Shown here piece after piece: positions 2,672 through 33,200 of a stretch of 64,000 nt of DNA. The position numbers and the translations under genes were made by a program. Origin of the DNA: Vitrella brassicaformis CCMP3155 (taxonomy: Eukaryota > Protista > Chromerida); assembly GCA_001179505.1 (NCBI GenBank), contig CDMY01000422.1, forward strand, positions 16,075 through 80,074. The letters are read 5' to 3'. The notes beneath the pieces are model-generated. The model was not told the origin of the DNA and searched no databases. It saw only the letters and a list, made by a program, of their open reading frames with translations. Numbering within the stretch: the first letter of the stretch is position 1; the number at the start of each line of letters is the position of its first letter.

Positions 2672-3060
2672 CTATCTCCTTTTTGTTTGCTCTCGTTCAC
2701 GCGCTTTCATAAAATTTCCCCTGACTCGCTCGCGTTCGCGAAACGAAATGCATGCAAAGCCCCCATGGCCGCATGCGAGCCCCCAGCCGAAGGGAACCGA
2801 AGGAAGTGCTAGTTTGGCGAGCTTTTGGCGTGTGTGACCGCCCCTTTTCTCCTTTGACGATGGCATGTCGCCGTTTTCGATCACCTCGAGTGCAGCGCTG
2901 ATGCTCGTCAGCATCCTTCGATTCCGTTTCGTCAGCAGAAAACTACGAGGGGCGTCTCGAAACATATCGCACGTGTTTCTTGTCAAATCTTTTCTGCATC
3001 TCAGATCAAGAGGACTTTCAGGTGCGTCGGTTGGCGAATGACAGCTCGTCACGCAGCGGG
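2672..3060 (-). pseudogene. Degenerate member of the tandem AP2-like family (helix end plus linker only)
   Basis: LDLRCRKDLTRNTCDMF...LTKRNRRMLTSISAALEVI aligns with ALELKRQHLLTGKCAVC...LTTRDRRQLAAINAALGVI (31.5-31.8 kb). His->Asp and Cys->Phe are each one base change; downstream sequence diverges. Confidence 0.45.
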
Positions 3061-13088: not shown

Positions 13089-14554
13089 GGCCGCGCGCAA
13101 ACGAGGGTGTGTGGTGGGATTCGCAGGTGGACCACCCTTCTTGTTGGCAGCGCTTTGCTGATCGATACAGCCAGTCACGAATCCCTTGTACAGGTCGGCA
13201 TTTTCATATGAATCCCTGCCTGATCTCCTCGTTCCGTCTACTATCCTTCCCGTCTTTTTCTGCCCTAGCCCTCCGTGGCCGGGTGCATTCCACAGCAGTC
13301 TTCCAGGCAACGGAAGCTCATTTGCGGCATAAGGTGCGCAGTAGGGGATGCATCAGGGGAGTGAATACGGACGACAGGCCAGGCCGGGTCACTGATTTAC
13401 AATACATCACCTGTTTTTATTGCATGAAGGCGCATAGCCCTATGGCGTTCTTCTCTGCCTCCCCTGAGCGCCTGCCGGCCATTCCATGTGGTGGGGCTCT
13501 CCAGCTATACTGTCGTCGGGGGCCGCAGAGATGACGATGGGCTCGAAGTATGGATAGCGAGCACCAGAGGGGCGCGACTGGATGGCCCGGCGCATCTGTT
13601 GGAGAGGCCGACTTACGGCACTCGCGTGGCGCTGTCGACAGTGAAGAACATGCTCCAGACGGCGCCGTCCTTGTTGCAAGTGCGGGAAGTGCATGGAGAA
13701 GAACCCGATGCGGCTGCGAGCAGTGTCCCGCACGAGACCTCCGCTCTTTTGTGGCTGGTGGAGACGATGAGCAGAGGATGCACGTTGCCTGTCACGAAAT
13801 AGATGGAGACACTAGTTCATGGATGGGGACTACTCCAAACGGAATGACGACATTGAAAGAACCCGGGCTGGACGGGGAGTCATGCCGTCCAATTTGATGC
13901 CGTCTCGCAGGACACCTGGCATCTGTGAGTACCAGGGTACATTACTGGTGGCGGATACGGACTCGGACAGTGCCGGTGGTTGCTTTTCTTAGCTAGGCGG
14001 TGGTGTGGGTGGCCCGCTTTGTCCAGTGTGTGTGTGGAAAAATACTGTTGAATGAAAAATGGATTGGAATAGTTTGACGCAAGATGAAGTTTGGGAGAGC
14101 TATATAATGCGAAGGGCAGCGAAGGAGCGCCGACGACAGGTCAGTTCATCTGAGTGATGCATGTGTCTCCGCGCCGGTCTGCGCTTCGTGCATCCCTCAC
14201 TCCAGCAAAGGGGCCGAGAGTAAACAACCTTCACTGTCTGCAGATACGTATCGTGACAGGGGCTGGATATTCGTGAGGCACCACACAAAAAAGCACGTGC
14301 CGTAGGGTATGCACGGACCTAAGACACTGATGGCAGGCTCCTCTAGTACATATATATCTCAGCTTGAAAAGCCAGACAGAATAAAGGCCTACACCCACCC
14401 GTCCACCCCATCTCGGTCATCCATCAGTCAACAAGACCTACATATGTCGATCTACATATTGGTCTACGTAGAGAATCGAAAAAGGTATCAACGGGGAAAA
14501 TTTCCCTCACCATATGAAATACACCATACACAGATAGGGAGTGGGCAACTAATC

Positions 14555-17050
14555 TCATTGACAACACTTCGTGCCCAACAGATGCTCGTACTTGAGCAGA
14601 AGAGCTTCCTTAATTGCTTCCAGCTTCCCATGGGTGCTCCATGGAAAGATCGCTCTGCACTCTTTCTTGTTGCGCTGGTGCTTCATCACACAGCGCTTGT
14701 TGGCCGAATCGAGCGTGCACCCTGTCTTCTTGAGAGGTGGCAGTTCGTGTTTGGCGATCACATCGAGTGCAGCTTCGACGGCCGTCAGCTGCCGCCCATC
14801 CAGGCCCGTGAGCTGGGGCCCTGCCTCCTCGGTGTCATGCATGTCAACCGATGGCGCACACTCGCCGCACTCACCATCCTCCAGGTGCTGCCGTTTGCGC
14901 AGGAGAGCAGCAAGCAGCGCTTCCATGCTGGTGGGGTAGTCGACCGTGCCTGAAGTGAACGGACTCCGTGTGGCTCATCAACTGCACGCACGCATAGAAC
15001 AATACTGCTGATGGGTCAGATCTCAACGAATCTACGTGATATGTTTCTATTCGTACCCATGCCGACGGAGGCCTGTGGGAAACTCCAATCCGAAAGTGAG
15101 GAGACACCTCACGTCGCTCTCGTATGGCGGCCTCGACCTCCTCGATGACACTGTTGATGCACTTGACTTTCAGACTCTGAGTCTCCTGTTTCTTGAATTC
15201 CTCCCACCCTGGCCCCCGTCAATGCATTTGGGACAGCCATGGCCCTGCAGGTGCTGCTTCCTGCACTCCAGGGCGGCCAGCAGTGCCCCCCTCTCTCCGT
15301 CGTACAGTTGATGTTTGCGGAAATAACGCTGACACGTCGAATGCCATGCAAGCCATCCTCCCGTCCGACCGTGGGTAGGGCGATGCTGCCGACGTCGACC
15401 GACTTGTTGTTGGTCTCCTCGATGGCCCTCTCGACGTCCTTGATCTCTCGCTGCTGGTACTCCTCGTACCGTTGTTGCGCTGTCTGCGCTGCCTGGCGGA
15501 GGGCTGCTGCCACCTGGCCACGACGTGTGTGAGTGGCGGGGAGAGGGGCGGGGGAAGGATCCTGGGGAGGGGGGAGGGGGTATACTTGCCGCGGGGAGGG
15601 ATCTTACGCAGGTCGGGCTGGGGGTGGCCATCAGGGACAGGGGAGAGAGGAACAGTGCGGGAAGTGTCTGACTTGACCTAAAACAGCACAAGACACTCGC
15701 GGCGATTCGTATGTGCGGGCTGATTCGTACCTCGCCATCGATGCCTATGTAGACTGGGTACACGGGCTTGTGTCGGTTGTAGTACCTCAGATCCTCGAAC
15801 TCCTCGGGCAACTCCGTCTTGTCAAATGCATCACGGCCAGCGCCATCGCGAGGGACAATGCACCAGCTCATCACCTGCCACAACACAGACACGACAGTGG
15901 ATAGATCCCTCAGACATATCAGGTTGTGCCACAGCTTCGTACCTGCGCGATCGATGGCGGTTCGCCCCCATTGTACTTGCTGTACTGGTTGTCGACCATC
16001 GTGAGGAAGCAGTGGGCGGTCATCCTCATCCCAGGAAGACGATAGCGGTTCGAACAGGAGCAGAAGACGTCGTACAGCTGGAGGGCCTCTGCAGGAACAA
16101 AGAACATCAGCCCATGAGTGGATGCAAGTGCGTGTGTTGCATTGTGCATTGATAGATTGCCAACCTTTCGGACTCTTGAAGCTCCACCTTTTCTTGACGA
16201 CATCGAAGAACTTCTTCCAGTTGTTGCGCTCGTGGTTCCTGGCCCTTCCGTCCGTCCACACTGAGTCCACTGCTGCAAAGGGAACAGAAACAGACAAGAT
16301 GATGAGGGCCGATGTGTCCTTCTGCCTTGTTAAGACTTACCTGCAGCGGTGTGATGCTGTCGTCTCCCTGCAATCCAGCAGCCTGGTCGCACTCGGCTGC
16401 CTCTGCAGTATAGCCTTGCTGCCTGAGGTAGTCGCACACCGCCATGACGCCCCCTGTGTTGGTAGTCTGCCGTAGCACGGACACGTCCTCGCGGAAAGCG
16501 AGGGTCTGCATACAACACATGCCAAGCAGCCACGTCCAAGCCGCCTGTTTCGTTTGTGAGGGGGTTTGCAGTTCACCTGCTTGAGCGTTTCGTAGAGTTT
16601 GTCGAACTCCTTCTTGATGCAGGTGGGGTCGATAGAGTGGAAATCGTGCACCTTCTCAGAAACAACGACTACCTGAATCGACACGCGGACAAGGAAGAGA
16701 TTGTCTGATTAGTGCGGTATCGCCAGGTGTTTCCTTTGTTTACGTGGCGCTTGTGAGCTGCTTTGTGTGGCTTCAAGAGCTCTTCAAAGAAGGAGGGAAA
16801 GTCCATCGGTACCATCTCTCGCAGCTCCGAGTCGCCCTTGAAGAGGCCGTATTTCCATGCCGCAGGATCAGACTTGCCCTTGATAGGACGGCTCTTCCAC
16901 CAATATGGGTAGACCTGCGATGGTGTAGAGCCCGGCTCCCCCTGTGGACTACAGATGTTGCTCACGTCCCATACGACGATCATGAGCTGTCCAGGTGGAA
17001 AACCCAGCGGCCTGGAGGGTGGGTAATGTGTTTGTGCAATGGTTTGACCT
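14555..17050 (-). pseudogene. Multi-exon gene with three tandem AP2-like repeats and a possible N-terminal PWWP-like segment; about three frameshifts
   Basis: Repeat c: TGCTLDSANKRCVMKHQRNKKECRAIFPWSTHGKLEAIKEALLLKYEH fits the AP2 pattern (G..D...W/C.....F....G...A...A...K). Repeats a and b are recoverable only by frame changes near 15360, 15205 and 14965. Intron 14982-15056 is conserved with the 31 kb paralog. Confidence 0.65.
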
Positions 17051-17629
17051 GAAAAACCAAAACGGTCAGCACAATACCATACCGAGACACGGGATTGAAG
17101 AAAATCTATGGGGATGAAGGAAAGGCTTGCTGGGTTCCTTCCTCATGGCAGTTCATGTCCATATGTCGGTTGCGCCTCCTCTGTCGACCTCCGCAGGCGG
17201 CCGCGGCCCTTCTTTTTCCTCCTCTTCATCGCCGTGCAGACCTCTCAGTCGGTGCAGACCCTCTGAAGGAAGGAAAGAGAGGGAAAGGCCGAAATCGCAC
17301 TGACGCAGTGGATGCACAGAATGAACGGGAGGATGGCTGGGCTAGAAGTGCTCGATCAGCTCTGTCTCCAGAATTTCGTGGACGGCAGAATCCCCTCTCC
17401 TCCACGCATTTGCGTCGGAGAATGCATGGGAGAATGTGATGAGAATGCTCTGACGGCGAGAAGGGAGTGGGCCCAGCCATAGGCAGACGACATAGGAGAC
17501 GGCCCCATCGAGAGGCTAAACTACATCCCAGGTTGGCAACGGGTGTATTCCGAGTCGTGAGGCGTAAATTCAAGGAGTCCAGGGAGAATTAGACCCACGA
17601 TCAACAAACCCGGTCAAAACGGATCTCTA

Positions 17630-19380
17630 TTTTGTGGTCGGTCACCCCCCGATGGGTGTAGCTGCTGTGGCCAGCACTGGTGACGGCTTGGGCAGGCAGG
17701 CACTCACCAGTGTGGGATTGACATACGGACGAAGCCGACGAAGGTCCTCCAGAATCTTGGGGTCATTCCACGGACCTGAACACACACACACAACACCGTC
17801 ACGTCACCACACACTAATCCCCGCCTCAAACGCATTCGTGTGCGTGTGCGTGTGCGTGTCGTCTGTCATTTGTCCTCTGTCTCGTGTCGGCAGAAAGTGC
17901 CTGACTGGCTGGCTAGCTGGCTGCGCACCTCTGTTCCAGCTCATCCATTCTTCAGGATTTGAGTACTTGTTTGTCCCACCTGACGGAGAGACCGACGCAC
18001 AAGCATCACATAACAATTGCCTCGTCTCACACAAGCCTGTCCGACCAAGGAAGTCCGGGAGCTGGTCGTCATCGGCAAACTGAGATAGAATGGGCCTGAG
18101 ATGGACATATCACAGACACCCGCCCGCGCACACCGCACAAGCACACCAGTGAATATCTTCTCCAGCCATCCTTTCATGTGGATTGTCACTTGAAGCTCTT
18201 GATGTCACCGCATAGCTGAATCTTCTTGACCGTCTTCTGAGATGCCAGGGCACGCGGGCACTTGTGTGAAGGAACAGAGGGGTATGATCCGTGTGAGTAT
18301 GTGCTAGCTCACTTCATCGAGGAGTGGTTTGACGAACTGCCATATGACGTTGAACACGGTTGGAGTGTTGACGATGATCATATTACCTGCGGCCATCCAT
18401 TCCATCGACAGCTCCTTATCAAGCTCTTTCGTTTCGCTGGCGTGGCTGTCGCCCCCCTCCCCCTCTCACCCAGTGATTCTGGGTAGTAGTCTTGACAGAC
18501 ACCCGTGAGCTTCTTGACGATGGTGCGAGTCTGCGTCCCAAAGTGGCGAAGACCTGCACAAGACATGTATGCACACATGCGGACAGGCCAGAGAGAACAG
18601 ACATGGAATAGTTCGTCGTCCGTAAAGGAGGATGGACGTACGTACCCAGCCCCGAGAGGTCGAGGACGGTGAGTGACTGTGAGATTCTCTTGCCCGACTT
18701 GACACTGCAGGCGGGGAAACGGACCTCCAACACTGAATTCACATTAAGTAGAGGGGTGCTTCACACCCTGTGCAGACTCCTTGTGATCCCGGCTGCTTTC
18801 GCGCGCGCCCTCCTTGTCTCCCGCCCACCCTTGTTGTACATTTTTCGTAGTCTTGCACCCAGTATTCCAGCAGGCGCTCGAAGTTGCAGTTCTCGAGCAG
18901 AGATGCGACATCGATGGAGCCTATCCGTTCGACGTAGATGGGGCGGCCTGAGCACGCAGACGAGAAAACGCAGTCAGCCACCCAGCCAGATGCACGGCTG
19001 GACCCGTCTGCACGTGACAATTGGTGGGTGAGAGGCTGACCGTCTTTTGCCACTCCGTGATAGCCGTGGGGGTAGAACTTCCTTATGACCCTGGTCTCGG
19101 GGAACTCGCCCTCCTGACCACACAACACAGATGACATCCATCCATCATCAGGTTGGTTGGTTACGTTGACGATTCTGTCGACTCCGAATTCCTCCCTCCA
19201 CTTGATGTAGTTTTTGATCATGATGAGTGATTTGTCGAGGTCGAACTTCCTCGCGCGCAGGAAGCGAAGCAGGAATTGGTCGTCGTACCTGGGGTGGGAT
19301 AGGAGCTCTCCGAGAGAACTCTTAAAGGCCATCAGCGTTCTCTCCTGCTCCTCACTCAAATCACCCACGAAACCTGACAT
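17630..19380 (-). CDS. SEC14/CRAL-TRIO lipid-binding protein, multi-exon (3' end approximate)
   Basis: [16 protein letters not shown]...[36 protein letters not shown]; [13 protein letters not shown]; RPIYVERIG; QDYYPESLG; GPWNDP. Confidence 0.92.
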
Positions 19381-19808
19381 CTTGACTCGGTACACAAGAT
19401 GCTCCGTAGGATCTAAAGAAAGGAAGGCGGGAGGACCGGGCGGGAAGCAGATACACGCTGCAATGGCTGACGGAAGTCTTTCTCCACGCTGTTCAGCTGC
19501 GGATCTCCACCCATGAGGTACATCCAAGAAGATCGCATGCGAGCCTAAAGCCAAGCTCGCGGGAAATTTGTTCTTTCTCCGGTTCGTGATGAGTTTCCGC
19601 ATACAACACGCAATACGTCTGTGGCTTCAACAATTGAGCCCTTCTCACGCGCGAGCTAAAAAAGCAGATCTGCAACAAAAGAACGGGTGCACAGCCAGAA
19701 TTTGATGAGACTGGAGACTGGTGAGAATTTGATGAACAAACCAAGACAGATCTACGAGACATGATGTGATGTATTGATGGGTATTAGTTCGTTAGCATAA
19801 CGCGGAGA

Positions 19809-22679
19809 ATGGCTTTCGCATCGACCTCTCACACGAAGGTTGACGCCAACAGTGTACAACGTGCGGTAGGAACGTGCTGCCACAGCTGCCCACATGAGGG
19901 TGTCCATGTGTTCTGTGTGTACGGCAGCTGTCCGAGTGTCACCCTGAGGGTGCGCGTGAACTTGGTGAGCTGTTGGCGATGGCCCGGCAGGCCGAGGAGG
20001 CCACTGTGCGCCGAATCGCGGTCTTGGAGGAAGCGCTGGCACCCACCTGGGATCCAAGAAAAGACGTATGGGCCCACGATACGCCATTGTGAAACGTATG
20101 ACTGCACCACGACCTGACTGACTGTATTTGGGTGGTTCAGTTCGATATGACGGCCGACCGCCCAAAGCAGGACGTGAGCACTCGAGCACAGATGTATGTA
20201 TGAATTCACTGCCGCACGTACGTCCTTTTGTTTGTGTGGTGATGCTGTCAGCCTGGGGTGTGCCGGCTCCGTGTGTTCATCTACAACAGCGCTACTAATC
20301 AGCCACGGGACCCTGATGGGGGACTTGCCAGCTTCACCCACGAGGCACGGAGGGCAGGGAGGAGGCTGTCCGTATGTTGGATGGATGCATGAATGGAGGA
20401 CAGGGGAACGTAAATATCTGTGTGTGCGGGTTGCTGGGGCATTCACCCCCCTGGTGCAGGATTGGAGTCGCAAGGACCCTCCTTCCTGGACACTTCGCAT
20501 ACAGGGGACCGTTGACGACACGCAGGTACGTCAAGGCGTAGTACACGGAGCCCGTCGCAGCGGCAGCGCAGTAGCTTGACAACAGCCAACGTCCAGAGCA
20601 CCTTTGTTGTTTGATTTACTGTCAGAGAGCCCTCGGCGCGAAGCTGACGTCCTTCGTCAGCAAGATAGTGATCATTACGAAAGATGAAACCATCATAGTA
20701 AGTTGCTCACGGGGTGGTTTAGGACAGAGGCAAAGAAGGTGTGTCCCTCTCATGGGTTTGTTGTGCGTACAGTGGGACAGGAGGTCTTACGAGGGCCCTG
20801 ACGTCGATGGCATCGAACTCAAACGTACAGGAAATCAGGTACGAGGCACAAAGGAGGAGAAAGGGAGAGAGGAAGAAAGGACACGGACAGAGAAGGAGGC
20901 ACAGGTGGTGGAAAACAAAGAGCTCCCTCGGCCGCTGTCTCCGCGTATGGTCGCCTCCACAGGAGATGGCGGTGCGCGTCCTGCTGTTCCTCGATTACAA
21001 GACACCGCAATACACCGTAGGCAGCTATCCACATGCAGCCGGGCACCGACGCCTCCATCCAGTGACACGAGCCAGCCATTCACTTCCCCTCCCATCCTCC
21101 CTCCCCCGTTCCCTCCTCGTGTTATCATCCAACACCTGCAGTTGAGTCAAGAGCTGACGCAGCTCACAGGGGGGACACAACAGGCTTCACTGGCTGGTAC
21201 GCAACTGTGCGCCACTTATATGGCCACGTACATTAATGCATACGAGGGGATTGTGTTTCATCCGTGCGGTGGTGTGCCAGGCGTAATCAAGAAGATATGC
21301 GAGTACGCCAGGACGAGGGGGGGGTTCCTGCCGGGCCCACATTTCGCCATCAAGGCAGACGCAGCCATCAAGAAGGTATGCATGGTGGTATAACACAAAC
21401 GGATATGAAGTTATGATTGAGTGAATGAATGGATTGCCCACGTGGTACAGCTGTTTCCGTCGGTAGGGGATTCAGTGTCCCTTTCGAGCCTGCCTGACCT
21501 GTGCCGGCCTCACCTGCGGCCGCCTAAGCCCATCGAAGTCACTCACCAACTCAAGTGAGTCAATCTGTCCTGATAACACAGTCAGGCTGGACTGACCGAC
21601 CAACTCACAGATCAAGGCAGTCAGGTGGCAGGCAGGCTTACCGGGAGTGTATGTGCAGACTGCATTGTGACTGGATCGACACGGAGACGTCATACGAAAT
21701 ATGCATAGAGGTAAACAAGCTACATCTGAGGTTGATACATATGTACTCTTTACGATGCACGAGGCGTCCACGCCGCTGCCCTCCCTCTCCCCCTCTCCCT
21801 ACCCCGCTCATTCCCTCGTTCTCCCTCTCTCCCTTGTCTGAATGGTGCTGTGCTGCATGTGTGAGCAGACCCCTCATTTGCTTCATACTGACCTCTCCAA
21901 GGCCCTGCATGGCCAGCCTAGTATAGCTGAAGCCAGGCGCCAGATCGAGGTAGCTGACGAACAGGTAGGGACGCCCCTTGTTGGCCGTGGAGGCGGGCAG
22001 GCAAGGTTGAACCTCTACCTGCACGGCTGTCCTGCCCTTGGCCCTTCAGGTATCCAAGATCCTGGAGCGGATTCAGCATCACATCAGGAGGCGAAACCAC
22101 ATGCTGGCCTTCGCAAACTCACCTGTGGAGGTAGGCACGGATGTAATTCCACTAAAATCCAAACCCATGTGTTCACATCAGTGCAGGCAGCTCCAGTAAG
22201 TAGACACATAGACAGCTCAGGGACACACACTAATGAACCATCTGCGTGCGTGGATCATTCTGTGGCTGCCTATAAGTCTAAATGTGTGTATCTGGGGCAG
22301 TTTCTGCACGCGGTCCTCAGCTCGGGCTCACAAGCAGTCCCCGCGGTCAGTTGACATACGTACTTACATGCTTGACATCACGCCGTACCTGTGATGTGGG
22401 ATCTTGTCGTTGTGCCATCCCCGCCTACGTTGGATGCAGTCCTGGCCTCTGTCCTCTGCCGACGATTGTTTCGAATCTCGACGCCCCGAGAGGGATGCAG
22501 TATTCTTCGCACAGGTACCTAGCCCAGCGACGAGTCAGTCGTCCATCGCCGAATCACTCATCCATCCACGGGTGTGGCTGGCTGTATCTGCGTGGGCTCG
22601 TATCGTGTCGCAGCCGTGGGTTCCCCCGGCGACTCAGCGATATTTGGAGCGTTCCCGTAGGTTGGGGAATCATGACTGA
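19809..22679 (+). CDS. SWI/SNF BAF60/SMARCD-like subunit (SWIB domain), multi-exon; start approximate
   Basis: ELLAMARQAEEATVRRIAVLEEALAP, RLRVFIYNS, WTLRIQG, LTSFVSKIVI, DGIELKRTGN, VRVLLFLDYKTPQY, ILERIQHHIRRRNHMLAFANSP and PWVPPATQRY match BAF60 blocks in order. Confidence 0.85.
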
Positions 22680-22974
22680 CCATGACGGTTAGAAAAGGAA
22701 GGACAACTGATCTCGCCGACCAAAATCGACTACTCAGTAAGTACATTCTCATTGATGATGATGCGCGACTCTTTCCGGTGACACAGCAACACACATTAGC
22801 CTGCGCGTTCCTCTCCTGAGGCTGGTCTGCTTTGATGCCCGCCTGGCCCTTTCTCCCTTTCTCCCTATTGGTCGGCTGTTGCGAGTGGATGGTGGTGTGT
22901 GGGCTTGAGCTGGCCACTTTTGGTCCGCCACGGCCACGTTCAAGCATGATTATCGTGAAGTGACACCTCTACCG

Positions 22975-23015
22975 CACCCCTCGGGGGCAAGGTCCCCCCG
23001 GGGTTACGAACGAAC
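22975..23015 (+). repeat. Solo copy of the LINE-associated hairpin/(CGAA)n tail motif
   Basis: CCCTCGGGGGCAAGGTCCCCCCGGGGTTACGAACGAACG matches the reverse complement of 915-960 and 278-310. Confidence 0.7.
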
Positions 23016-23419
23016 GACTTCTCAGAGTTGCCTTACCGAAGAAAATCCCGCCAAACGCCGAGAAAAGGGTTTTCACGCGACGTGAATGTTCCCCCTCCCC
23101 CGTCATAAACCAGGTAAGGCGCAACAGCGCAGGGAGAAGCTGTGAGAATATTCTTCTTCCTATGCGGGGTTTCTGCAAACGAGACCCGCCACTTGAGAGA
23201 TGCGCGCGACATCAAAAATAGAAAAGGGAGGATTGCAGGAGAAGGCGATAGGAAAGGACGTACAAAGAGAGCACGAATATGGAGAGGAAGGAGGGAGAGA
23301 GAGGTGAGGACCTGAGAGATCTCCGCCGTTGCGCTATGTCAATCTGTCCGAAACCTACTGATATTGTGTGGGTATTTCTATATATATATCGGTGTCTCCC
23401 TTGTCTACTCCATATTTGA

Positions 23420-23740
23420 CATCCGCCTCTGGTGTAGTGCATAGCCCAGCAACCGCCCTGCATTGCTTGATCCCCTCCGCAACCCCCTGAACAGTCGATC
23501 TCTCGGCCCACCCGTCACCTCCCTCGTCCCATTCAAAGCGCCCTCCAACCGCTCCAGCACAGGGCTAGGAAGCACCTCCCCAGCCATGCCGTGACCCTCC
23601 ACGAACCCCTGAATGACGTCATATGCGGCCTCGAGCTCCATCTCGGCATCGGACAATGCAGTGCTGGGCCGGGCACCCACCTGCTGAGCGGCCGACGACA
23701 GAAGCACCACCGCATCCGTCTGTGCTGCAGACGGTGATGT
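23420..23740 (-). CDS. Fragment of an unknown gene family, paralogous to 9760-10090
   Basis: Open frame TDAVVLLSS...EMELEAAYDVIQGFVEGHGMAGEVLPSPVLERLEGAL; DNA similarity to the 9.8-10.1 kb block. Confidence 0.45.
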
Positions 23741-23892
23741 CGCAGTGGGAGAGGGGGCGGGCGACTCGATCGGGGAGATGGGAGGGAAAGAGGGCCCTTC
23801 CCAAGGCCACCCACCCCGCCAGCCCCCTGTCCATCTCTCCCCCCCCCCTCGCCGAATAACATCTCTTTCTTCTTGCACCACCTTCCCCCCTC

Positions 23893-25332
23893 GTGAATTC
23901 ATGCTTTCTGGATCGAGGAGTAAGCATGAGGTGACTCCATGCTTTCTGGCATGTACTCCGCGTGCAAGGGACCCACTTTGTCTGTCTTCCCCTCCCCCCG
24001 GCACAACGAGTCTTCAGACGCTTTCGAACTGCAATTTGCACCAGCGTGCGACTGCCATGTTGTCTCCTACCTATGAACATTGACACATTGAAGCTTGTCT
24101 TTTGAAGCCCCCTCCCCCGTTCAAGGGGGAGGGGGCGACATTGCATGGTCCACAAGGCATCTGACTTCACACGGTGTGCCTTTACTGCAATCACCCATCA
24201 GAAACAGCGATCGTCGGCTTCTGGACCAGTGCTACCGCTAATGACTGAGTCCGCTTCATCCGCTCTCCCCGGATCCTTGCAAAATACCGTCAAATCGTTG
24301 CATCTCTTGCACGCTCCCTTTCAGGATTTACCCTAAAGGTCAGCCCGTGGCCAATCGCGATCACTGGAAATTTGTGTACATTCGACTTTGGTGCGACATT
24401 TTGCCTGGTGTCCCTTCCCGATCGCCTCCCATTACTCGGGGGCCCCTCCCCCCTCGTAACCGTTCGTCGAGCCGCGTTCGCGGCGAGGCCCATCGAGGAG
24501 TAGCAAGCATGAGGTGAATTCATGCTTTCTGGCATGTACTCGCGCGTGCAAGGCCCCACTTTGTCTGTATTCCTCTCTCCCCAGCATAACGAGTCTTCAG
24601 ACGGCTTTCCAACTCCAATTTGTGCCAGTGTGCGACTGCCTTATTGTCTCCTACCTACACCCCACCAGGACGAAATTGACTTGTTTCGCACTTGTTTCGT
24701 CTCTCTGTAGACTGATGCCTGTGAGGTAGGATGTGATTGTCGGCTGAAGGTGTGCATTGCGTGTTCGCCGGTGTGTTGCCGACGGCCGCCAGGCAGCAGA
24801 CATTGGCTATCGGTTGATCATCCGTGCATCGCATTGATTGAGACGCCATGAGTCGGCTGATCGGCCAGGAAACGCAAGCATGCACCAGGGAGTAGTCGGC
24901 GGGCATCAGGCTGCATACCAGCGGTCATCAGGGAGCACTCGGCAGGCGTCAGCGGCCCGGATTTCTGCTTGTGAGACTCGGTTTTCCTTTTCAGCCTCCA
25001 AAACCCGGTTTTCTGTCCTCAAGACGGGTTTTCTGTACACTGTACAGGGCTGCTGGTTTTCTGCACGAGCAGCTGCTTTTCTGTAGAGAGGCTGGTTTTC
25101 TGTACAGAGACAGACAGTCGGGGATAATACGTTCATAACAGTGCAATGACAGTGCAGCGTCCCTTTCACGGTTTAGTAAAACGAGTCTGTGCGAGTCCAT
25201 AGAAAATCACGAGTCAGGAGAAGGTGGATAAGCAATATTGGTGCGAAATTTGTTCCTTGCCGACCGCCTCCCACACGGGGGCCCCTCCCCGCTCGTAACC
25301 GTTCGTCGAGCCTTCACGGCAGGCCCATCGAT
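23893..25332. repeat. Mosaic of local direct duplications (23912-24075 ~ 24492-24655; 24385-24495 ~ 25232-25332), a GGTTTTCTG array, and a LINE 3' fragment (25186-25225)
   Basis: Shared strings ATCGAGGAGTA..AAGCATGAGGTGA..CATGCTTTCTGGCATGTACTC and GGGGGCCCCTCCCC.CTCGTAACCGTTCGTCGAGCC. TCTGTG.GAGTCCATAGAAA.TCAC.AGTCAGGAGAAGG also occurs at 330-368. Confidence 0.8.
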
Positions 25333-26299
25333 CGATCATGCTCATATACGCAGAGTTGTATTGCCTGTAAAGAAAGATCTCTAGAGAAAGATGGCTTTTG
25401 AGTGGCGAGATGACTTTCTGCACTGCCTTCTTCGATCACTAGCTCGCAACGAGTGGAATTCTCTGGTGAAGCGTTATCCATCGAGAGGGAGATTCGAGTC
25501 CCTCAATGCACTGAATTGAGTCACCCTGCAAAGTACGTACAGAGAGAGACAGAGCAGGCGGATCAATCCATCCATCCATCTATCAACGACTCATTTTTTC
25601 TGAGTGTCTCAGTGCTGTGCCGATGCGTCTCAGTGTTCTCCGGGGCGAAAAACAGGTTTTCCCATGTTAAAGTCGCAAACCCAAGGGAGGAGCCTTCAAC
25701 GAGCAGACCAATGAAAACATTTACGTCTGACCAACTAGTTGTCGGACGCATTGACTGCAGAGAGGCATGTATGTCCCAGAGGTGCTACGTGAGGGCATCG
25801 ACCAAGTGTGTGTTATGCATCAGGGCAGAAGCCTCTTATTTGAAAAACGGAAAGGGGGTGACAAGCGAGGAAGGGGTACCAACGATCGGAAGAGTAGTAT
25901 TGAATATGAGGGTTCGGCCAACTGATATTGGGGGTGTTTGTTCGGTCAGCTTTGCTATTCACTCAATCTAGTCAATCACATCCTTCTCTCCTTCCTTCCT
26001 CGCCGTGTTCACATTCGCCAGCGGGGCCTACCGGCGCCGTGGGTCCTGTTGAGGTGCATGGGGGTGGGAGACGGCGCCCTGACAGAGACATGCATGCCAC
26101 GCCACCACAGGTGGGCCGCTGAGCGGGTACATGGACGGGCATTGCAGCGTCGACTGCCTCCACCGACCATCGGGTGCAAGCGTATATACATGAATTCGTA
26201 CCGCTTGAGATGGCCTGACAGTGTGCGTCCCGATCTGCCGCCAGCCGTGATGGAGTGTCCTCCCGCGAACTTGTCCAGGAGCAGCCCACTGCCACCACT

Positions 26300-29200
26300 C
26301 ATCGAAAGCAGAGTAGTCGTGGGGGCAGGTACAGATACACCAACCGCTGGACAACAAATAACGGCGTGACTGCTGTGTTGCGTGTGTATGGAGACATGAG
26401 CGTACCTGGCGACGCGGGTCGCGAGTGGTGCGGTGATGGCGGGCGACCGTTGAGGGTCCCCCGCAAAGGACCAGGAGACGGAGGGCGGCCTGAGAGCGAG
26501 TGAGGGAGGAAAAAATGCCTGTGTCGTCTTGTACGGTCTGTCATCGAAGCCTCTTGTTTAGCGGACCATGTGTCAGGTATGGTCTCGAGGATGGCGCGGT
26601 TGATGGCCTCTTCTTGCGCATTGCATTGCTGCCGTACTGCTCCTGGCACTCGTCCTCACTGCTCCCCACACGGGCGCTCCCATCACCGCGAGGTCTGAAG
26701 CCGCCGGACCGCTGTGATTGGCCATCTGCACGACACAAAGACATACACACAAACGCACACCCAACACTTGCGGCAACCGAATCGCAACACTGTGGTCGCT
26801 TCGGGTAGCGGTCAGACAGGTGCGGTGTGCGATGAGGTCACGGACCATCTCGGTTGAGGTTTCCGTACAGGGTACCATTGCCAAAGCCGTTGGTCATCTG
26901 CACACAGCCAGCGGTGACACACACCCACACACAGTTTGGTGCAATGGGACACAAGCGCTAGCCAGACTAGTCCTCCAGCCTCGCTCACCACTCTACTCTT
27001 CTCGTATCCGGCGAAGGCCCGTGATGCCGATGCGTTAGACCCCCCCAGACGAAGAGGGCCGGGCGAACCTTTTCGAAGGGATGCGCTGTTCGGACACAGC
27101 AAACAATATATACCAGCCCCTTCCACTGCCACGTTAGCAGGGGGCGTCCTCTGGCCCAACTTTATTGACCTGCTTCCACGCTCTCGCTGGCTTGCTCCGA
27201 GCATCGGTGACGGTTCGCGGACTCTGCACAAATATGAGAACACTGGATGGTGGCGATTGGTCACTTCCATCGTGCCCACCGATTCGGTGGCGTAACCCCT
27301 GAGTCTCGCCTCGAGCTCCCCCTCTCGCGGTACGCTCCGTATGCCCCAGTGAGATGCAAGGATCCCCCTTCCGCCATGCGGTCGCGGTTGTAGGTGTTGT
27401 TGAGGCTTCCTCCCACTCCGCCCGCCACGGACGCACCTGCAGGGTCCCCTCCCAGCCCCAGCCCGACAGTCAAGCCCATCGATGCAGCCTGCCGGGACTC
27501 CGCACCATTGGCCGATGTCGGTGAGCCCTGACGGAGCATCAGTGGGGGCGTCGACGGACGAGCCGAGCGGGTATCCAGTGCCCGTGCCTGCCTTCCGTTG
27601 GTGGTGTGCATCGGCAGGAACCCGTCGGCAGCGCCAAGGTTATGCGGTGCGTTCAATGACAGCGAGGAACCCAGAAAAAAGCTGCCCAAGGCAGCACCAC
27701 TGTGCGAACCATTCTTCAGCTCACGGACAGATGCAGTGTTCCTACGCACATAAAAAGATACATTCATTGCCGCCTGTGGCTGCATTGAATCATCCAGCCA
27801 TCCATGTATCGGGTACCGGAAGGCAGCATCTTGGTCAAACACGTCCCGGTAGAGTCCCCGGCCTGACACACGAATGAGAACGTCCAGCATCCATCAACAT
27901 CAGACAGGGTAGCGCCATAACAAAGGTCGCATCGGTTCGCGCTCAAGGCGCCCTTACGGAGAATGCTCCGAGCGTTCTCGGACGTACTGCGATGCTCGCC
28001 ATGGCCATCCTCATCTGCAGGAATCATGAAGAATGAATGAAAACGTACGCCTGCCTGGTACGAACCGACTCGACTGACTGGCTGACTGACAATGGCTTGC
28101 CACATGAATGAGTGCATGCATCGCCCGGCAAACGGTGCTGCTGACCTTCGCCAGTAGCCCATGGGAAAACCTCCCTCCTCTGCACGGCTTGCGTGAACCT
28201 GCTAGGTGCATGAGAGGCCTCATCCTGCACAGACAGAGACACAGAGAGACGGACGTGCATGGTACGATGGACTACTCAACCACGGCGCACCTTGTTGTTG
28301 GCTTGTGTGAGCCCCGTCCCGTTGCTGTTCTGTGATGTGCGGTAGTCTCTGTTGGATTGTGCTGTATCTGTGGGCGAAGGCTGCCCGTCATCGACGACCG
28401 ACGTAGGAGTGTCGATGTCAGCACGTGCCTCGGCGGGGGGGATGTATTGATGGCGTTTCAACATCTTGAGCTGCAGTCCACGACAGCTGTCACCGGCTGA
28501 ATAGGGCCCGCTGCTGGTCTTGACACCACTCGTGCTGTCGCATACATCTGAACCAACGTAATCTCTACGTCATATCTTCATATTTGCAGTGTTCACCGAC
28601 CTGATGAGTCCTTTCGGCTACACCTTGCGTCTTTAGTAGTGTATAGAGAGGCGGGTGCAGCAGGTGCTATGTCATGCGCACTGGCGCCGGCATTCTTTGT
28701 CAAGGATCCCGACTCAGGCCCCACGGCGGCCCCCGAGACACCGGCATTGAGGTTGCTGGCAGCCGCACCGGACATCTCCTTGCCTGTCCCCTGCCTCTGT
28801 GCCCCGCTGGATTGCTCGGTGCCCATGGCCACCTCCCGACCCGCATTCAGGGCCCCCGCCACTACTCCATTGGGAGCCTGCGTGCACGTCTGACCGCCTT
28901 GAGGAGCCTTCGGCTGAGGCAGCTGCTGGAAGAACGCAGATGATGACACTACACCGTTGCTGCTCGCTGAAGTGTGGGCCTGGCTACTGAAGAACTGCTC
29001 GCCGACGGAACTGGCGCGCAGAGAGGGCACGAAAGCGGTCGTGTGCTGCGATGTATCTGCACCCACAGGAGACAGACAGACAGACAGACACGTGAGTATA
29101 ACGAGAGGGACAGCCTCCCTCCAGGGCTGCCTCGACTGACTGACCGACCTACCCTTCGAGGGCCCTGAATCCAACAATGTGCCACATAACTTATCTCCGG

Positions 29201-30771
29201 CCCTCTGCCCGTCATCCGCTGGAGCTACGGTTTTGCCGGTGGAGCTGCTCGCAGCGAGAGCAGTGGATGATGATGCTGAGGCCGGGACGAAGGTGGCACT
29301 AGCTACCGAGGGCGACGGCGTGCTGGCGCTGGCGACTCTGTTCTTAAGAATGGACTTGAGGGTGGCTTTGGTGCCGTTGACGGTGCTGAAACTGGGCGGG
29401 TCCGTCGAGAGGGGAGCTGCTGACGAGGATAGGTTGGTGGTCTCGAGGCGCTCCTTGTCGTCCGCGCCGCGGTCCGCCCACGCCAGACGACGCGTGCCGT
29501 TTGAAGGCTCGCCGGGACCCGGCGCGCTCGGCGACGACGGCTGCGCTGCAAAACAACAAATAGGTCCCAGGAGTAGGGAGAAAGCGCAAATGACAAATAC
29601 TAGCGTCGGGGAGCCACAGTTACTCGAAGCAAGATTGTCGTTTCGTGAGTTAATGTAGGTATTCCTCAGCAAAAGTTCCTCCGAGTCCAGGTCGGCTACA
29701 GGGCCGTCTGAAGAAGCACATGCAGAGTAAGTGAGAGACGTTCGGTGGAAGGCGCTACCGCCTGCGGCACTTGACACACAGATTCGTACCATTCCAATCG
29801 ACGGATCGTTTTTTGTTGAGGTTGGGTCCGAAGAGCCTCTTTTCGTAGTCCTCGAGCTGCTTCATGAAGCCCCGCTTGATCTGAATGTCGCCTCGACGAG
29901 ACGTCAGGTACTCGATGGTCTTCTCCAGTGACCATTGGTACCTGCATTCACAACACATACAGACCCAGACACGGGGCACCGCACCCATACCGGCAGTGGA
30001 GCCATTACATCTCGCGCGGCCCCTGGCCTCAGGTGTGCACGTCTGTGTGTCTGTCTGTCTGTCTGTCTGTGCCGTCGAGTCACACGCTTGGAGACGTGCA
30101 TGTGTGTTTTATGTAGGTACCTCTTCATCAGGTAGGCGACGACGATGCAACAGGACCGTGACTGCCCCCGGAAGGAGTGGATGAGAACTGACTCGCCCTC
30201 ATCGACGCTTTCTTGAATAAACGCCGCCACCTCGTTGGCAACCTGATCTCGGTTGTCCAGGATCAGCTGGGGAAACATATGGCAAACAAGAAGACCCACA
30301 CAGTAGTGCCAGTCACATGGGCTACCCAGCGGGTATGGCCGCGCATATATATTTTCCCTACCTGGTTGTCATGGTCCATCCAAAAGTAAGTGAGGTACTG
30401 AATGCCGATATTCTCATAGTTGTTAGGCACCTGGCGCCCAGCGCAATTCACGACGTGAGAGACCTGCCATACAAAACCGCCGTCACACATGTTGCCCGTC
30501 CAGAATGAAAAGCCCTTCTCATCCAGACTTCTCAGGAACCTTGTTTGCAAGAAGAAATTCAAAATCGTGCGCTGAAAGCTGAGGAAATTCAGTGAGGCCA
30601 CTGCTATCGTCTACGGCCTTGCACTTGTGGCCTTGTTTTTCATTGCGTACCTCATCGCCGACAAACAGACCATCTTTGACCTGAAAAAGGCGCAAACAGA
30701 CACCCACTGTCAAGTACCTTCATCGACCGACACGCCTAAGGTACCTTGACCGCGCCTAGGATGTCCATCAT
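26300..30771 (-). CDS. Dual-specificity phosphatase-like protein (catalytic Cys->Ser) with a long low-complexity tail; 3' end approximate
   Basis: MMDILGAVK|DGLFVGDE, SHVVNCAGRQVPN, VAAFIQESVDEGESVLIHSFRGQSRSCCIVVAYLMKR, WSLEKTIEYLTSRRGDIQIKRGFMKQLEDYE. Confidence 0.85.
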
Positions 30772-30787
30772 TGTCAACAGTCTCCAC

Positions 30788-30905
30788 TTGGTTGGTTGTT
30801 TATTGTGTTTAACGAGACTCGTGTCTGTAACCCCGGAGGGATCCTGTTGTCTCACGAGTACACTAGCAGCACGTACATGCAAAGCATGCACACGGCCTGT
30901 CTACC
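30788..30905 (+). repeat. Most complete copy of the dispersed ~120-bp GCATGC-rich repeat
   Basis: Contains both halves seen separately at 10.4-10.66 kb, 52.7 kb and 54.4 kb. Confidence 0.85.
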
Positions 30906-31319
30906 CCTCCCTGTACTGGCACCGGCGGACAAAACAGATGGCAACAGAGAGCACTGGCTGCCTTGTAGAACGTTGACAAACACCGATTCCGGCTACATAC
31001 ACAAGAACGGGCGCTGTCGCCCAGCAAGAGCCATGGCAAGTGTACAGAAGCCAGAAGGGGGAAGTGGAAAAATGAGCGCCCTCTGAGCCACCAAAGCAAC
31101 AATCAGCCGCTCCAGCGGCCAAGTGTGGCCTGGCTTTGGGGCAGGCGTGTCCGTAAAACAGCTTGGGGTACCTTGCAAAAAGCCCCCAAGCTCGCATCTG
31201 GAGGGATTGCCAGCTTGGCCCCAATTGGGGTGCACGGACAGGGGCGCGCCGCGCTCACAACGGAGAATTGGACCGACGGAATCTCTTGTGTGGATTTTTG
31301 TCCGGACAATTTTCTCCTA

Positions 31320-31929
31320 GGGAGGTCGAGGCCGGACGCGAGGTGACTCTTCCTCGGAGGATTGGCGTTTACCGTATGTCGAAAACCTCATCGACATGGG
31401 TAGAGTAGAAACATATCACGTACATTCGTTGAGAACGGACTCATCACCAGTATTGATCTATGCGTGCATGCAGGTGATGAGCCACGAAAGGCATGGCGGT
31501 CGGTGTAAGATTACCTTCACTCCAGGGGCCTCGCGCGGGGGCAGCACCAGCATGGAGGCGCTGCTCAAGGCTCTGGAGCTCAAACGGCAGCACCTGTTGA
31601 CGGGCAAGTGCGCCGTCTGTGACACGTCACCCGCACGTGGCGACGAGGAGGGGGACGCTAATCTCACGACGCGGGACAGGCGTCAGCTGGCGGCCATCAA
31701 TGCTGCACTCGGGGTGATCAACACACAGCGCGAGGTGCCGCCTACCTTTGGGACTGGGTGCTTCGTCTACGAGTCCCGCAGGCTGGTCATCATGAGCCAC
31801 AAGCGAGCACCTAAACCAGAGTGCAGAAAGACTTTTCCATGGCACCATGGGAAGCTGCAAGCAATTCAGGACGCTCTTGTGCTCAAGTACGACCATGTGT
31901 TGAAGAGGAGGTGTTGTCAAAAAGATTAG
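31320..31929 (+). CDS. Two tandem AP2-like repeats, open frame when spliced (intron 31400-31473); apparently a 5'-truncated duplicate of the 14.5-15.1 kb locus
   Basis: Spliced: REVEAGREVTLPRRIGVYRMSKTSSTW|VMSHERHGGRCKITFTPGASRGGSTSMEALLKALELKRQHLLTGKCAVC...VPPTFGTGCFVYESRRLVIMSHKRAPKPECRKTFPWHHGKLQAIQDALVLKYDHVLKRRCCQKD*. The intron is phase 0 with GT..AG. Confidence 0.7.
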
Positions 31930-31998: not shown

Positions 31999-33200
31999 TT
32001 CCGAGTAAGGGGCACCCACTGCGTGGGCACCCCGGGCCGCGAATTGGGCGGGGGTCCAAAGCAGCGTGCGAAGTGGCGGTGAATTATGCGTCACAGAGAC
32101 ATGCACAGCACGAGTGTTGGCGAGAAGCACACCGACGCATGCAACAATAGCGAGAGTGTCAAAAAACATGCAGACAACAATGGCGGGAGCTTGAAAAACA
32201 TGCAGATCTCGAAGACAGACGTGGCAATAACATGCAGGTACTCAAGAGGGCTGCAGTAAGAACACAAGACACGCCCTTGTTGAAGACGTGCTTGGCCAAG
32301 TATATCAATGCATCGATGCATTGATATGTGAACCTATCGATATCCAGCGGTGATATCAATAGACATGTATCAATCTAGCGCGCCTGTTGAAGGGGCTATT
32401 GAAGACTGCCTTCGATGACTGTCAATCGGCTTGTCAATCAAATGGGAGCCGCCAGGGTCAACCCAACGATGACCTGCACCAGCAACGCAACAAGGTAAAT
32501 GAAATCGGCCACAGCCGCGCCACGTCAGATGAAGCAAGCCCCCTGAGTNNNNNNNNNNNNNNNNNNNNNNNNNNNNNNNNNNNNNNNNNNNNNNNNNNNN
32601 NNNNNNNNNNNNNNNNNNNNNNNNNNNNNNNNNNNNNNNNNNNNNNNNNNNNNNNNNNNNNNNNNNNNNNNNNNNNNNNNNNNNNNNNNNNNNNNNNNNN
32701 NNNNNNNNNNNNNNNNNNNNNNNNNNNNNNNNNNNNNNNNNNNNNNNNNNNNNNNNNNNNNNNNNNNNNNNNNNNNNNNNNNNNNNNNNNNNNNNNNNNN
32801 NNNNNNNNNNNNNNNNNNNNNNNNNNNNNNNNNNNNNNNNNNNNNNNNCACACAGACGAGTGTTACGGTTAATGACAGTTTCCACTCTTGCTTTTTTAAG
32901 AAGTTCGCGCCCAGAGATGCCCTTCAAGCATCAGCGGTTTCATGTAGCACCCTAGACGTCCTGACCGCCAAGCTTTTCCAATAACTTGCCGCTTTAGGGC
33001 ATATCCGTTTGACGGTCACTGATCCAAACGTGACAAAAAACATGAAGCTGTTCGACATATTGGCGTGTCTGTAGTAGTGCGAGCAACACATCACCGCTAC
33101 CGATTTCCCTTTTTTCTTCCATACGATCGCGATCGAACGTTTTGTCCGACCGGACGTGTTGTTTCTTAAAGACGCAAATCGGGCACTAGCCCAATTCGCG
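31999..33200 (+). mobile_element. Helitron-like non-autonomous element, copy 1 (Pif1 part expected in the gap)
   Basis: 31999-32548 and 32880-33200 are the reverse complement of 55560-56141 and 54560-54870. It interrupts sequence that is contiguous in the paralog at 14462/14463. Confidence 0.7.
32549..32848. other. Assembly gap (300 N)
   Basis: Run of N. Confidence 1.

What the first reader, a model, noticed from the sequence alone, without database searches (positions are those of the whole stretch)
14555..31929. Tandem AP2-like repeats with a conserved C...H-x5-C-(x2)-C signature: candidate zinc-binding AP2 family
Seen: all five repeats end the AP2 helix with H-x5-C (QHLQGHGCPKC, QHLEDGECGEC, QHLLTGKCAVC, EHLLGTKCC, DHVLKRRCC). 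The four not hit by a deletion have Cys four residues before the conserved strand-3 Phe (TCQRYF, RCKITF, ECRAIF, ECRKTF). Repeats are joined by a VE.A(I/L)/I.AAL linker helix. Established: canonical plant and ApiAP2 domains do not bind zinc, and AP2 domains are often carried by mobile elements. Inference: a CHCC zinc site staples the helix to the sheet, defining a lineage-specific DNA-binding array that duplicates with TE help.
Basis: partly seen in the sequence, partly recalled or inferred. Interest (0 to 1): 0.8.

Follow-up and report, generated by a model that had tools for sequence, protein, structure and literature searches.

The report
Cys/His-bearing AP2-fold repeats, decaying family
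The repeats are real, very divergent AP2-type DNA-binding folds carrying a conserved Cys/His set that looks like a zinc clip, but they belong to a small orphan gene family found only in the alga Vitrella brassicaformis, and most copies, including the larger one in this window, are broken.

Summary
The genome is Vitrella brassicaformis CCMP3155.

**Fold.** AlphaFold models give each unit three strands and a helix. The best solved-structure matches are AP2 domains: three T. gondii mitoribosome chains (Z 7.5-8.2, one a sequence-confirmed AP2 domain), PfSIP2 (Z 7.0) and AtERF1 (Z 4.8). Unrelated folds start at Z 4.6. Pfam AP2 does not match, so this is AP2 by fold, not by the sequence model.

**Zinc.** Cys/His columns change far less than other columns across ten copies (11 changes against 28.9 expected, permutation p 0.0008). 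Ligand geometry could not be tested because no model coordinates were available.

**Family.**
- A profile search of 1.84 billion protein representatives found six proteins; the four with source labels are Vitrella.
- The genome holds about ten loci.
- The units form the C-terminus of a roughly 930-aa orphan protein.
- No copy has all three units intact, and dN/dS is near 1.
- Locus A in the window has three frame-breaking deletions. Locus B is a 5'-truncated two-unit copy.
- I found no transposon hallmarks.

Another first-reader note in this genome (s1-218700) raised the same idea.

Verdict: a new variant of a known fold, of moderate interest.

The parts
15215..15385 (-). Locus A unit 1: strand 2, strand 3, helix, then HLQGHGCPKC. 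Strand 1 was lost to a 25-nt deletion at about 15377/15376.
   Evidence: Translation. Alignment to L004 and L005 shows the 25-nt gap.
15057..15206 (-). Locus A linker 1 (helix VIEEVEAAI) and strand 1 of unit 2, ending at the Trp before the intron. It lies in a different frame from unit 1 because one G is missing from a G-run at about 15218/15217.
   Evidence: Translation. DNA alignment A8.
14982..15056 (-). Locus A intron inside unit 2, 75 nt, GT...AG.
   Evidence: Aligned to seven paralog introns. Homologous to the intron spliced out in P0001.
14849..14974 (-). Locus A unit 2 remainder: end of strand 3, helix, QHLEDGECGEC. An approximately 23-nt deletion at 14964/14963 removed strand 2 to strand 3, including the Cys, and shifts the frame.
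14558..14740 (-). Locus A unit 3, a complete unit: TGC, MKH, ECRAIF, helix, EHLLGTKCC. The stop codon is at 14555-14557. Together with the unit 2 remainder it is annotated as the 123-aa fragment P0005.
14274..14441 (-). Conserved roughly 170-bp 3' flank shared by family loci at 78-90% identity. The coding sequence is only about 70% identical.
15386..17015 (-). Degraded upstream exons of locus A. They are homologous to residues of about 343-700 of the full-length paralog P0002 and contain stops in frame.
31316..31399 (+). Locus B: truncated linker 1 (EVEAGREV) and strand 1 of unit 2 (GVYR...STW). Homology to the family starts here, so unit 1 and the N-terminal region are absent.
   Evidence: Translation. 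blastn extents.
31400..31473 (+). Locus B intron, 74 nt, GT...AG, ending in TGCATGCAG.
   Evidence: The splice junction W8|V9 in P0001 matches.
31474..31623 (+). Locus B unit 2: MSH, RCKITF, helix, QHLLTGKCAVC.
31624..31743 (+). Locus B linker 2 with the helix QLAAINAALGVI.
   Evidence: The AlphaFold model has a helix at P0001 residues 74-91.
31744..31929 (+). Locus B unit 3 (TGC, MSH, ECRKTF, helix, DHVLKRRCC) and the stop codon.
2840..2940 (-). Third family scrap, holding only the linker-2 helix region (...SISAALEVIENG...).

Best explanation
[quoted passage not shown] Three such units, joined by short helical linkers, form the C-terminus of a roughly 930-aa orphan protein family found only in Vitrella brassicaformis.

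Each unit has family-specific Cys/His positions:
- a His at the end of strand 2;
- a Cys four residues before the strand-3 Phe;
- a His in the last turn of the helix;
- C-x2-C (units 1 and 2) or CC (unit 3) just after the helix.

The most likely role of these residues (inferred, not shown) is one structural zinc per unit. The zinc would tie the helix end and the following knuckle to the strand 2-3 hairpin. The sheet and its basic hairpin (RNKK) would then read DNA as in AP2.

The family is decaying:
- No copy keeps all three units intact.
- Locus A in this window is a pseudogene with three frame-breaking deletions.
- Locus B is a 5'-truncated two-unit copy with an open frame.

Copies arose by DNA-level segmental duplication, not by a recognisable transposon.
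For: **Fold**
- The AlphaFold domain model has pLDDT 80.8, with strands at 9-12, 17-22 and 30-35 and a helix at 40-57.
- An exhaustive comparison with 48,161 PDB chains ranks AP2 proteins first: T. gondii mitoribosome chains at Z 8.2, 7.8 and 7.5, PfSIP2 at Z 7.0 and AtERF1 at Z 4.8. Unrelated folds follow from Z 4.6.
- 9hqv_Yn is 'AP2 domain transcription factor AP2IX-6', and its AP2 domain at residues 359-409 is the matched range.
- Foldseek gives TM 0.67-0.73 to the same chains.
- The ESM Atlas shape search returns HNH_3+AP2, AP2 and phage-integrase arm domains at TM 0.61-0.69.
- Language-model neighbours are AP2 clusters.
- hhalign against Vitrella's own AP2 domains aligns in register over 45 columns, P 0.006.

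**Cys/His set**
- The strand-3 Cys, the Phe and the helix His are among the six best-conserved columns across the three unit types, which are otherwise 16-30% identical.
- Cys/His columns show 11 changes against 28.9 expected (p 0.0008). There are 32 invariant columns against 16 expected under a uniform rate.
- In the C499 copy, unit 2 lost the His and both Cys together.

**Family and decay:** (census; dN/dS about 1; deletions in locus A).
Against: - Pfam AP2 gives no hit even at E 1-10. An unfiltered search with a Vitrella AP2 profile scores only 1-2 bits, and the hhalign probability is 6%. Homology therefore rests on fold.
- A small strand-strand-strand-helix fold can recur by convergence, and Z 7-8 is the range the tool calls common for best hits.
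- Zinc geometry was not measured because no coordinates were available. The CC tail has low model confidence, about 56-69.
- dN/dS near 1 and widespread frameshifts mean present-day copies may have no function, and the conservation may be a relic.
Confidence: 0.55

Rival explanations
1. The units have an AP2-type fold but no metal. The conserved Cys/His serve other roles, such as packing, DNA or RNA contacts, or redox-sensitive or disulfide bonds.
For: - No geometry or metal data exist.
- Unit 3 has adjacent CC rather than C-x2-C, which is an unusual pair of ligands for one ion.
- Five or six conserved Cys/His per unit exceed the four that one site needs.
Against: - A His followed five residues later by C-x2-C, plus a distal Cys, all conserved across three anciently diverged unit types, is the usual signature of a structural zinc site (general knowledge).
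- One copy lost three of these residues together.
Confidence: 0.2
2. This is a novel small zinc-finger class whose strand-strand-strand-helix shape resembles AP2 by convergence, not descent.
For: - There is no significant sequence match to AP2 by Pfam or by an unfiltered profile search.
- The unit profile hits none of the more than 150 canonical AP2 domains in the same genome at E 0.1 or better.
Against: - The top structural matches are all AP2 or integrase-arm domains and stand above the unrelated folds.
- The profile-profile alignment is in the AP2 register: Gly of strand 1, Phe of strand 3, and the Gly and Ala of the helix.
- The host genome is exceptionally rich in AP2 domains that could have been the source.
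Confidence: 0.12
3. The gene is cargo or a coding part of a mobile element or endogenous virus, which would explain the dispersed, broken copies.
For: - About ten dispersed loci exist, most of them fragments.
- The conserved 170-bp 3' flank also occurs at two loci without the coding part.
- A Helitron-like element was noted 8 kb before the window (unchecked).
- AP2 domains often ride on homing endonucleases and integrases.
Against: - No terminal inverted repeats were found, and I saw no convincing Helitron-type hairpin or end.
- No transposase, integrase, HNH or viral domain is present in the 926-aa protein or its neighbours.
- No relatives turned up in viral or metagenome contigs.
- The copies are old (69-77% identity) and clustered on C435 and C422, as local duplication would produce.
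Confidence: 0.1

Closest known systems
ApiAP2 / AP2-ERF DNA-binding domain (Pfam PF00847), e.g. PfSIP2 (6sy0), PF14_0633 (3igm), AtERF1 GCC-box binding domain (2gcc) and the T. gondii AP2 proteins built into the mitoribosome
   Same: - Both are roughly 60-residue domains with a three-stranded sheet and a C-terminal helix, often in tandem arrays joined by linkers.
- Gly in strand 1, an aromatic residue in strand 2, Phe in strand 3 and small residues in the helix fall in the same register.
- The family occurs in a chromerid with a very large AP2 complement (PMC4501334).
   Different: - The family fails the Pfam model.
- It carries conserved Cys/His at the strand 2 end, the strand 3 start and the helix end, plus a C-x2-C or CC knuckle after the helix. 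Vitrella's canonical AP2 domains have Lys/Arg or variable residues at those places and no Cys.
- The strand 2-3 hairpin is longer in units 2 and 3.
- The family is species-restricted and mostly pseudogenised.
Arm-type DNA-binding domains of tyrosine recombinases (lambda Int, HPI integrase; Pfam Arm-DNA-bind families)
   Same: Same fold class. Matches reach Z 4.0 and TM 0.61-0.66 in the Atlas.
   Different: Those domains sit at the N-terminus of a recombinase. No recombinase domain is present here, and the matches are weaker than to AP2.
Metal-chelating sheet-based DNA-binding domains (WRKY-GCM1 zinc fingers)
   Same: Both would be DNA-binding beta-sheets stabilised by a Cys/His zinc site. This comparison is from general knowledge and from PMC1702500, seen as an abstract only.
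   Different: WRKY-GCM1 domains have a four-stranded fold without the packing helix, and their ligands are placed differently. They did not appear among the structural matches.

Membership tests
AP2 / ApiAP2 domain (Pfam PF00847) | Sequence match to the Pfam AP2 model at or above its curated cut-off | tested here: not met
   No AP2 hit at E up to 10 for the window ORFs, nor at E up to 1 for the spliced proteins P0002-P0006. The same model finds at least 150 domains elsewhere in this genome, none of them at the family loci.
AP2 / ApiAP2 domain (Pfam PF00847) | Fold of about 60 residues: three-stranded antiparallel sheet followed by one helix packed on it | tested here: met
   AlphaFold models. 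The best PDB matches are AP2 domains at Z 7.0-8.2, with rmsd 2.5-3.3 over 57-60 residues. Atlas shape hits are AP2 and integrase arm domains.
AP2 / ApiAP2 domain (Pfam PF00847) | Conserved core positions in register (Gly in strand 1, Phe in strand 3, Gly/Ala in the helix) | tested here: inconclusive
   hhalign against 11 Vitrella AP2 domains aligns 45 columns in the expected register, but with P 0.006 and probability 6%. An unfiltered hmmsearch scores 1-2 bits.
AP2 / ApiAP2 domain (Pfam PF00847) | Sequence-specific binding of double-stranded DNA through the sheet | not testable with these tools
   Needs PBM, DAP-seq or EMSA.
Structural zinc-binding domain | At least four Cys/His conserved across members | tested here: met
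   The strand-3 Cys and the helix His are near-invariant across all three unit types. Cys/His columns show 11 changes against 28.9 expected, p 0.0008.
Structural zinc-binding domain | The ligands converge in space in tetrahedral geometry, about 2.1-2.3 A from the metal | not testable with these tools
   The prediction tool returns no coordinates (one search shows that no model files are provided). Only a topological argument is possible: the helix end and the strand-3 start lie at the same end of the AP2 fold.
Structural zinc-binding domain | Zinc present in the purified protein | not testable with these tools
   Needs ICP-MS or a PAR assay.
Transposable-element-borne gene | Terminal repeats or defined ends, a linked transposase or integrase, and many near-identical copies | tested here: not met
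   There are no inverted terminal repeats and no catalytic domain. About ten loci are mostly 69-77% identical, with two recent pairs at 95-97%.

The most novel reading that the evidence does not exclude
[quoted passage not shown] A zinc ion would replace part of the hydrophobic core and lock the helix to the strand 2-3 hairpin. The mix of invariant core and ligand columns with fast-changing sheet residues would then reflect a recently active, diversifying array of DNA readers, for example one aimed at repeats or foreign DNA, rather than simple decay.
Probability: 0.15. Interest if true: 0.65.

Novelty: new variant of a known kind. Interest (0 to 1): 0.4.

Why it matters
AP2 domains are the main sequence-specific transcription factors of apicomplexan parasites and their algal relatives, and canonical AP2 domains are not known to use metal. 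A natural AP2-fold variant with a zinc clip would show a new way for this fold to be stabilised. It would also give a compact, testable scaffold.

The family also shows how far AP2-derived domains can drift below the detection limit of the HMMs used to count ApiAP2 genes (PMC4501334 used an E-value cut-off of 1e-3). Published counts in chromerids therefore probably miss such lineages.

Two things limit the importance. The family is confined to one species, and it appears largely pseudogenised.

Tried and rejected
- **Sequence family scans.** Pfam on the window ORFs and on the spliced family proteins gave no AP2 and no other domain. The exception is DUF2358 at the N-terminus of P0006, which looks like a gene model fused to a neighbouring gene.
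- **PDB sequence search.** The unit profile returned only noise.
- **N-terminal region of P0002 (about 700 aa).** The word-based homology search found only Vitrella. The Atlas gave no usable hit, and its own model is poor at pLDDT 0.42. This region's function stays unknown.
- **Mobile-element hallmarks.** No inverted repeats, no Rfam family in 14000-17200, no tRNA in the window, and no convincing terminal hairpin in the conserved 3' flank.
- **Relatives in other collections.** None were found in viral or JGI metagenome contigs using P0003.
- **Conserved intron as a structured RNA.** The unit-2 intron is 81% identical on average, against 58-66% for the flanking exon pieces. A sliding-window profile shows it is no better conserved than the best exon stretches, and Rfam finds nothing, so I dropped this as a finding.
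- **Selection tests.** Sheet against helix partitions gave dN/dS of 0.45-1.6 with no clear pattern.
- **Gene calls around P0001.** The look-up of encoding contigs had no record.
- **Joined exons.** The spliced product was taken only as the database protein P0001, and strand 1 of unit 2 (window 31316-31399) was handled separately by reference.
- **Literature.** Searches for a zinc-binding AP2 variant found none. Balaji et al. 2005 was not held.
Full report
**Source.** The window is contig C422:16075-80074 of a 72.7-Mb, 1064-contig assembly. The only database match of the locus B ORF is a 159-aa 'unnamed protein product [Vitrella brassicaformis CCMP3155]' (P0001). The assembly size and contig count equal those published for Vitrella (PMC4501334).

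Locus A lies on the minus strand:
- unit 1 at 15215-15385;
- linker 1 plus strand 1 of unit 2 at 15057-15206;
- a 75-nt intron at 14982-15056;
- the rest of unit 2 at 14849-14974;
- unit 3 at 14558-14740.

Locus B lies on the plus strand:
- strand 1 of unit 2 at 31316-31399;
- a 74-nt intron at 31400-31473;
- unit 2 at 31474-31623;
- linker 2 at 31624-31743;
- unit 3 at 31744-31926.

The splice in locus B agrees with P0001, where W8 joins V9. The 16 kb between the loci holds unrelated genes, including a CRAL/TRIO-N and a dual-specificity phosphatase fragment. A third scrap with only the linker lies at about 2840-2940 on the minus strand.

**Fold.** Pfam finds nothing in the ORFs or in the spliced proteins. 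I ran two AlphaFold2 jobs.
- P0001 with a 16-row paralog alignment gave pLDDT 75.7. Unit 3 has strands at 104-107, 112-119 and 122-130 and a helix at 135-152, and the linker forms a helix at 74-91.
- Unit 3 alone with a unit-level alignment gave pLDDT 80.8 and pTM 0.66.

Foldseek against the PDB gave no hit at E 0.001 or better. Its top rows were T. gondii mitoribosome chains at TM 0.67-0.73, then the AP2 domain of PF14_0633 and PfSIP2.

The exhaustive VIA-align search of 48,161 chains gave these leading matches:

| Chain | Z | Note |
|---|---|---|
| 9i05_XH | 8.2 | T. gondii mitoribosome |
| 9g6k_LG | 7.8 | T. gondii mitoribosome |
| 9hqv_Yn | 7.5 | T. gondii mitoribosome |
| 6sy0_A (PfSIP2 AP2) | 7.0 | rmsd 2.5 over 57 residues |
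| 9fi8_HR | 5.3 | T. gondii mitoribosome |
| 2gcc_A (AtERF1) | 4.8 | rmsd 2.1 over 48 residues |
| hibernation factors, dsRBDs | 4.6 and below | unrelated folds |
| integrase arm domains | 4.0 | same fold class |

A profile of 11 canonical Vitrella AP2 domains identifies 9hqv_Yn and 9fi8_HR as 'AP2 domain transcription factor AP2IX-6'. Its AP2 domain at residues 359-409 is the structurally matched range. The T. gondii mitoribosome is known to contain four ApiAP2-domain proteins (PMC11742926). I did not establish which proteins chains XH and LG are.

Three further lines agree.
- The ESM Atlas shape search returned HNH_3+AP2, AP2 and phage-integrase clusters at TM 0.61-0.69.
- Language-model neighbours of P0003 were AP2 clusters at score 0.82-0.84, which the tool rates as a lead only.
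- hhalign of the unit alignment against Vitrella AP2 domains aligned 45 columns in the expected register with P 0.006 but probability 6%. An unfiltered hmmsearch scored 1-2 bits.

I conclude that the AP2/integrase fold is well supported, that membership of the Pfam family by sequence is not met, and that common descent is likely but not proven.

**Cys/His set.** The three unit types are 16-30% identical to each other. Across them the invariant or near-invariant columns are the strand-3 Cys, the strand-3 Phe, three helix Ala/Leu positions and the helix His, followed by the tail Cys residues. Canonical Vitrella AP2 domains have no Cys at any position and mostly Lys where this family has the strand-3 Cys.

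I merged the in-frame pieces of ten genomic copies, inside a script only, and counted Fitch changes on a FastTree tree over 150 columns.
- The mean is 2.22 changes per column.
- 32 columns never change, against 16 expected under a uniform rate.
- The 13 columns whose majority residue is Cys or His carry 11 changes against 28.9 expected (permutation p 0.0008).

All three ligand losses in unit 2 occur in one copy, C499, which reads QLLEGGGSVEG. That fits release of the remaining ligands once the site is broken, but the chance of this pattern is only about 0.06 by a simple count of my own.

On topology, the strand-3 Cys aligns four residues before the Phe that faces the helix. The His sits in the last helix turn, so both lie at the same end of the fold. 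This is inference.

I could not measure distances because models are returned without coordinates. The tail is modelled with low confidence. Zinc binding is therefore plausible, and I put it near 0.6, but it is not shown. Which four of the five or six candidate residues would be ligands is open.

**Family and gene.** A profile of the family searched against 1.84 billion protein representatives found six proteins, all at E 1e-34 or better. Three carry a Vitrella source label (P0001, P0002 and P0006). The other three match this assembly's own loci: P0003 at C435:74k, P0004 at C499 and P0005 at window 14555-14926. These are gene models.

P0002 (926 aa, C435:12460-16250) is the fullest copy. It has a roughly 700-aa N-terminal region with no Pfam domain and no relatives outside Vitrella, followed by the three units.

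Six-frame searches of the genome with P0001, P0002 and the unit profile find the same roughly ten loci and 24 unit hits. They find none of the more than 150 canonical AP2 domains.

Status of the copies:

| Copy | Locus or contig | State |
|---|---|---|
| P0002 | L005 | Unit 2 helix has a 4-aa deletion; unit 3 frameshifted |
| P0003 | L004 | N-terminally truncated; unit 3 broken by a 2-nt deletion that removes the strand-1 Cys codon |
| P0004 | C499 | Lacks unit 1; unit 2 has lost its ligands |
| - | C204 | Near-duplicate fragment of C499 |
| P0006 | C380 | In-frame stops |
| - | C1013 and C303 | Multiply frameshifted near-duplicates |
| - | C435:59k | Unit 3 only, with a frameshifted tail |

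Locus A has three frame-breaking deletions:
- 25 nt in unit 1, at about window 15377;
- one G in a G-run, at about 15218;
- about 23 nt in unit 2, at about 14964.

Its upstream exons also carry stops. Locus B begins inside linker 1 and lacks everything upstream. Its only in-frame ATG falls inside strand 1 of unit 2.

Pairwise dN/dS among copies is mostly 0.5-1.9 and centres near 1. Splitting the units into sheet and helix gives no clear contrast. So the average signal is neutral. The excess of invariant columns shows past, or residual, constraint on the core and the Cys/His positions.

**Mode of duplication.** Homology between copies covers introns, upstream exons and a 170-bp 3' flank, spanning window 14274-17015, at 69-77% identity. 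Copies cluster on C435 (four) and C422 (three). No inverted terminal repeats, no Rfam family, no tRNA and no catalytic TE domain were found. I therefore do not support 'TE help'. It is not excluded, because the 3' flank also occurs alone at two other loci and an unchecked note reports a Helitron-like element 8 kb upstream of the window.

**Limits.**
- No sequence in this window was treated as human.
- Another first-reader note in this genome (s1-218700) proposes the same zinc-stabilised AP2 idea for a different piece. It is unchecked and adds no independent evidence.

**Verdict.** The thing is a new variant of the AP2/integrase fold with a probable but unproven zinc clip, in a species-restricted and largely decayed gene family. 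Interest is moderate, 0.4.

Noticed in passing
window 14274-14441 (- strand); also window 33201-33313, C435:59961-60128, C204:65173-65289, C435:29207-29291: A roughly 170-bp segment just downstream of the family's stop codon is 78-90% identical among copies, while the coding sequence is about 70% identical. It also occurs at two loci without the coding part. It has no Rfam match and no clear terminal hairpin.
   Followed up: partly
window 31400-31473 and 14982-15056; paralog introns in L004, L005, L007, L009, L010: The short intron inside unit 2 averages 81% identity among paralogs and is 100% identical between the two C435 copies. The flanking exon pieces average 58-66%. A sliding-window profile shows it is no better conserved than the best exon stretches, so gene conversion or neutral drift beside fast-changing exons may explain it.
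   Followed up: partly
window 10505-10584 and 30788-30866; also C435 and C499: An 80-bp dispersed repeat, 83-94% identical between copies and not a tRNA, occurs near several family loci.
   Followed up: no
whole window; e.g. 2749, 3192, 4434, 4898, 28113, 31465: The palindrome TGCATGCA occurs 9 times against 2.4 expected from shuffles (0 of 100 shuffles reach 9). One copy forms the 3' end of the locus B intron.
   Followed up: no
window about 32460-32850: A run of N (an assembly gap) lies between locus B and its displaced copy of the 3' conserved flank.
   Followed up: no
window 18742-19602 (-) and 29907-30299 (-): Unrelated genes lie between the two family loci: a CRAL/TRIO-N (Sec14-like) exon and a dual-specificity phosphatase catalytic fragment.
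   Followed up: partly
G000 contigs C290, C269, C488, C708, C781, C367 and others: Canonical AP2 domains occur in dense tandem clusters, with at least 150 hits above the Pfam cut-off and many within a few kb of each other. This matches the published paralog cluster of about 50 apiAP2 genes in Vitrella.
   Followed up: no
P0006 (C380:28.5-31.8 kb): The annotated 592-aa protein joins a DUF2358/SnoaL-like N-terminus to the family's degraded C-terminal units. This is probably a gene model merged with a neighbouring gene.
   Followed up: no
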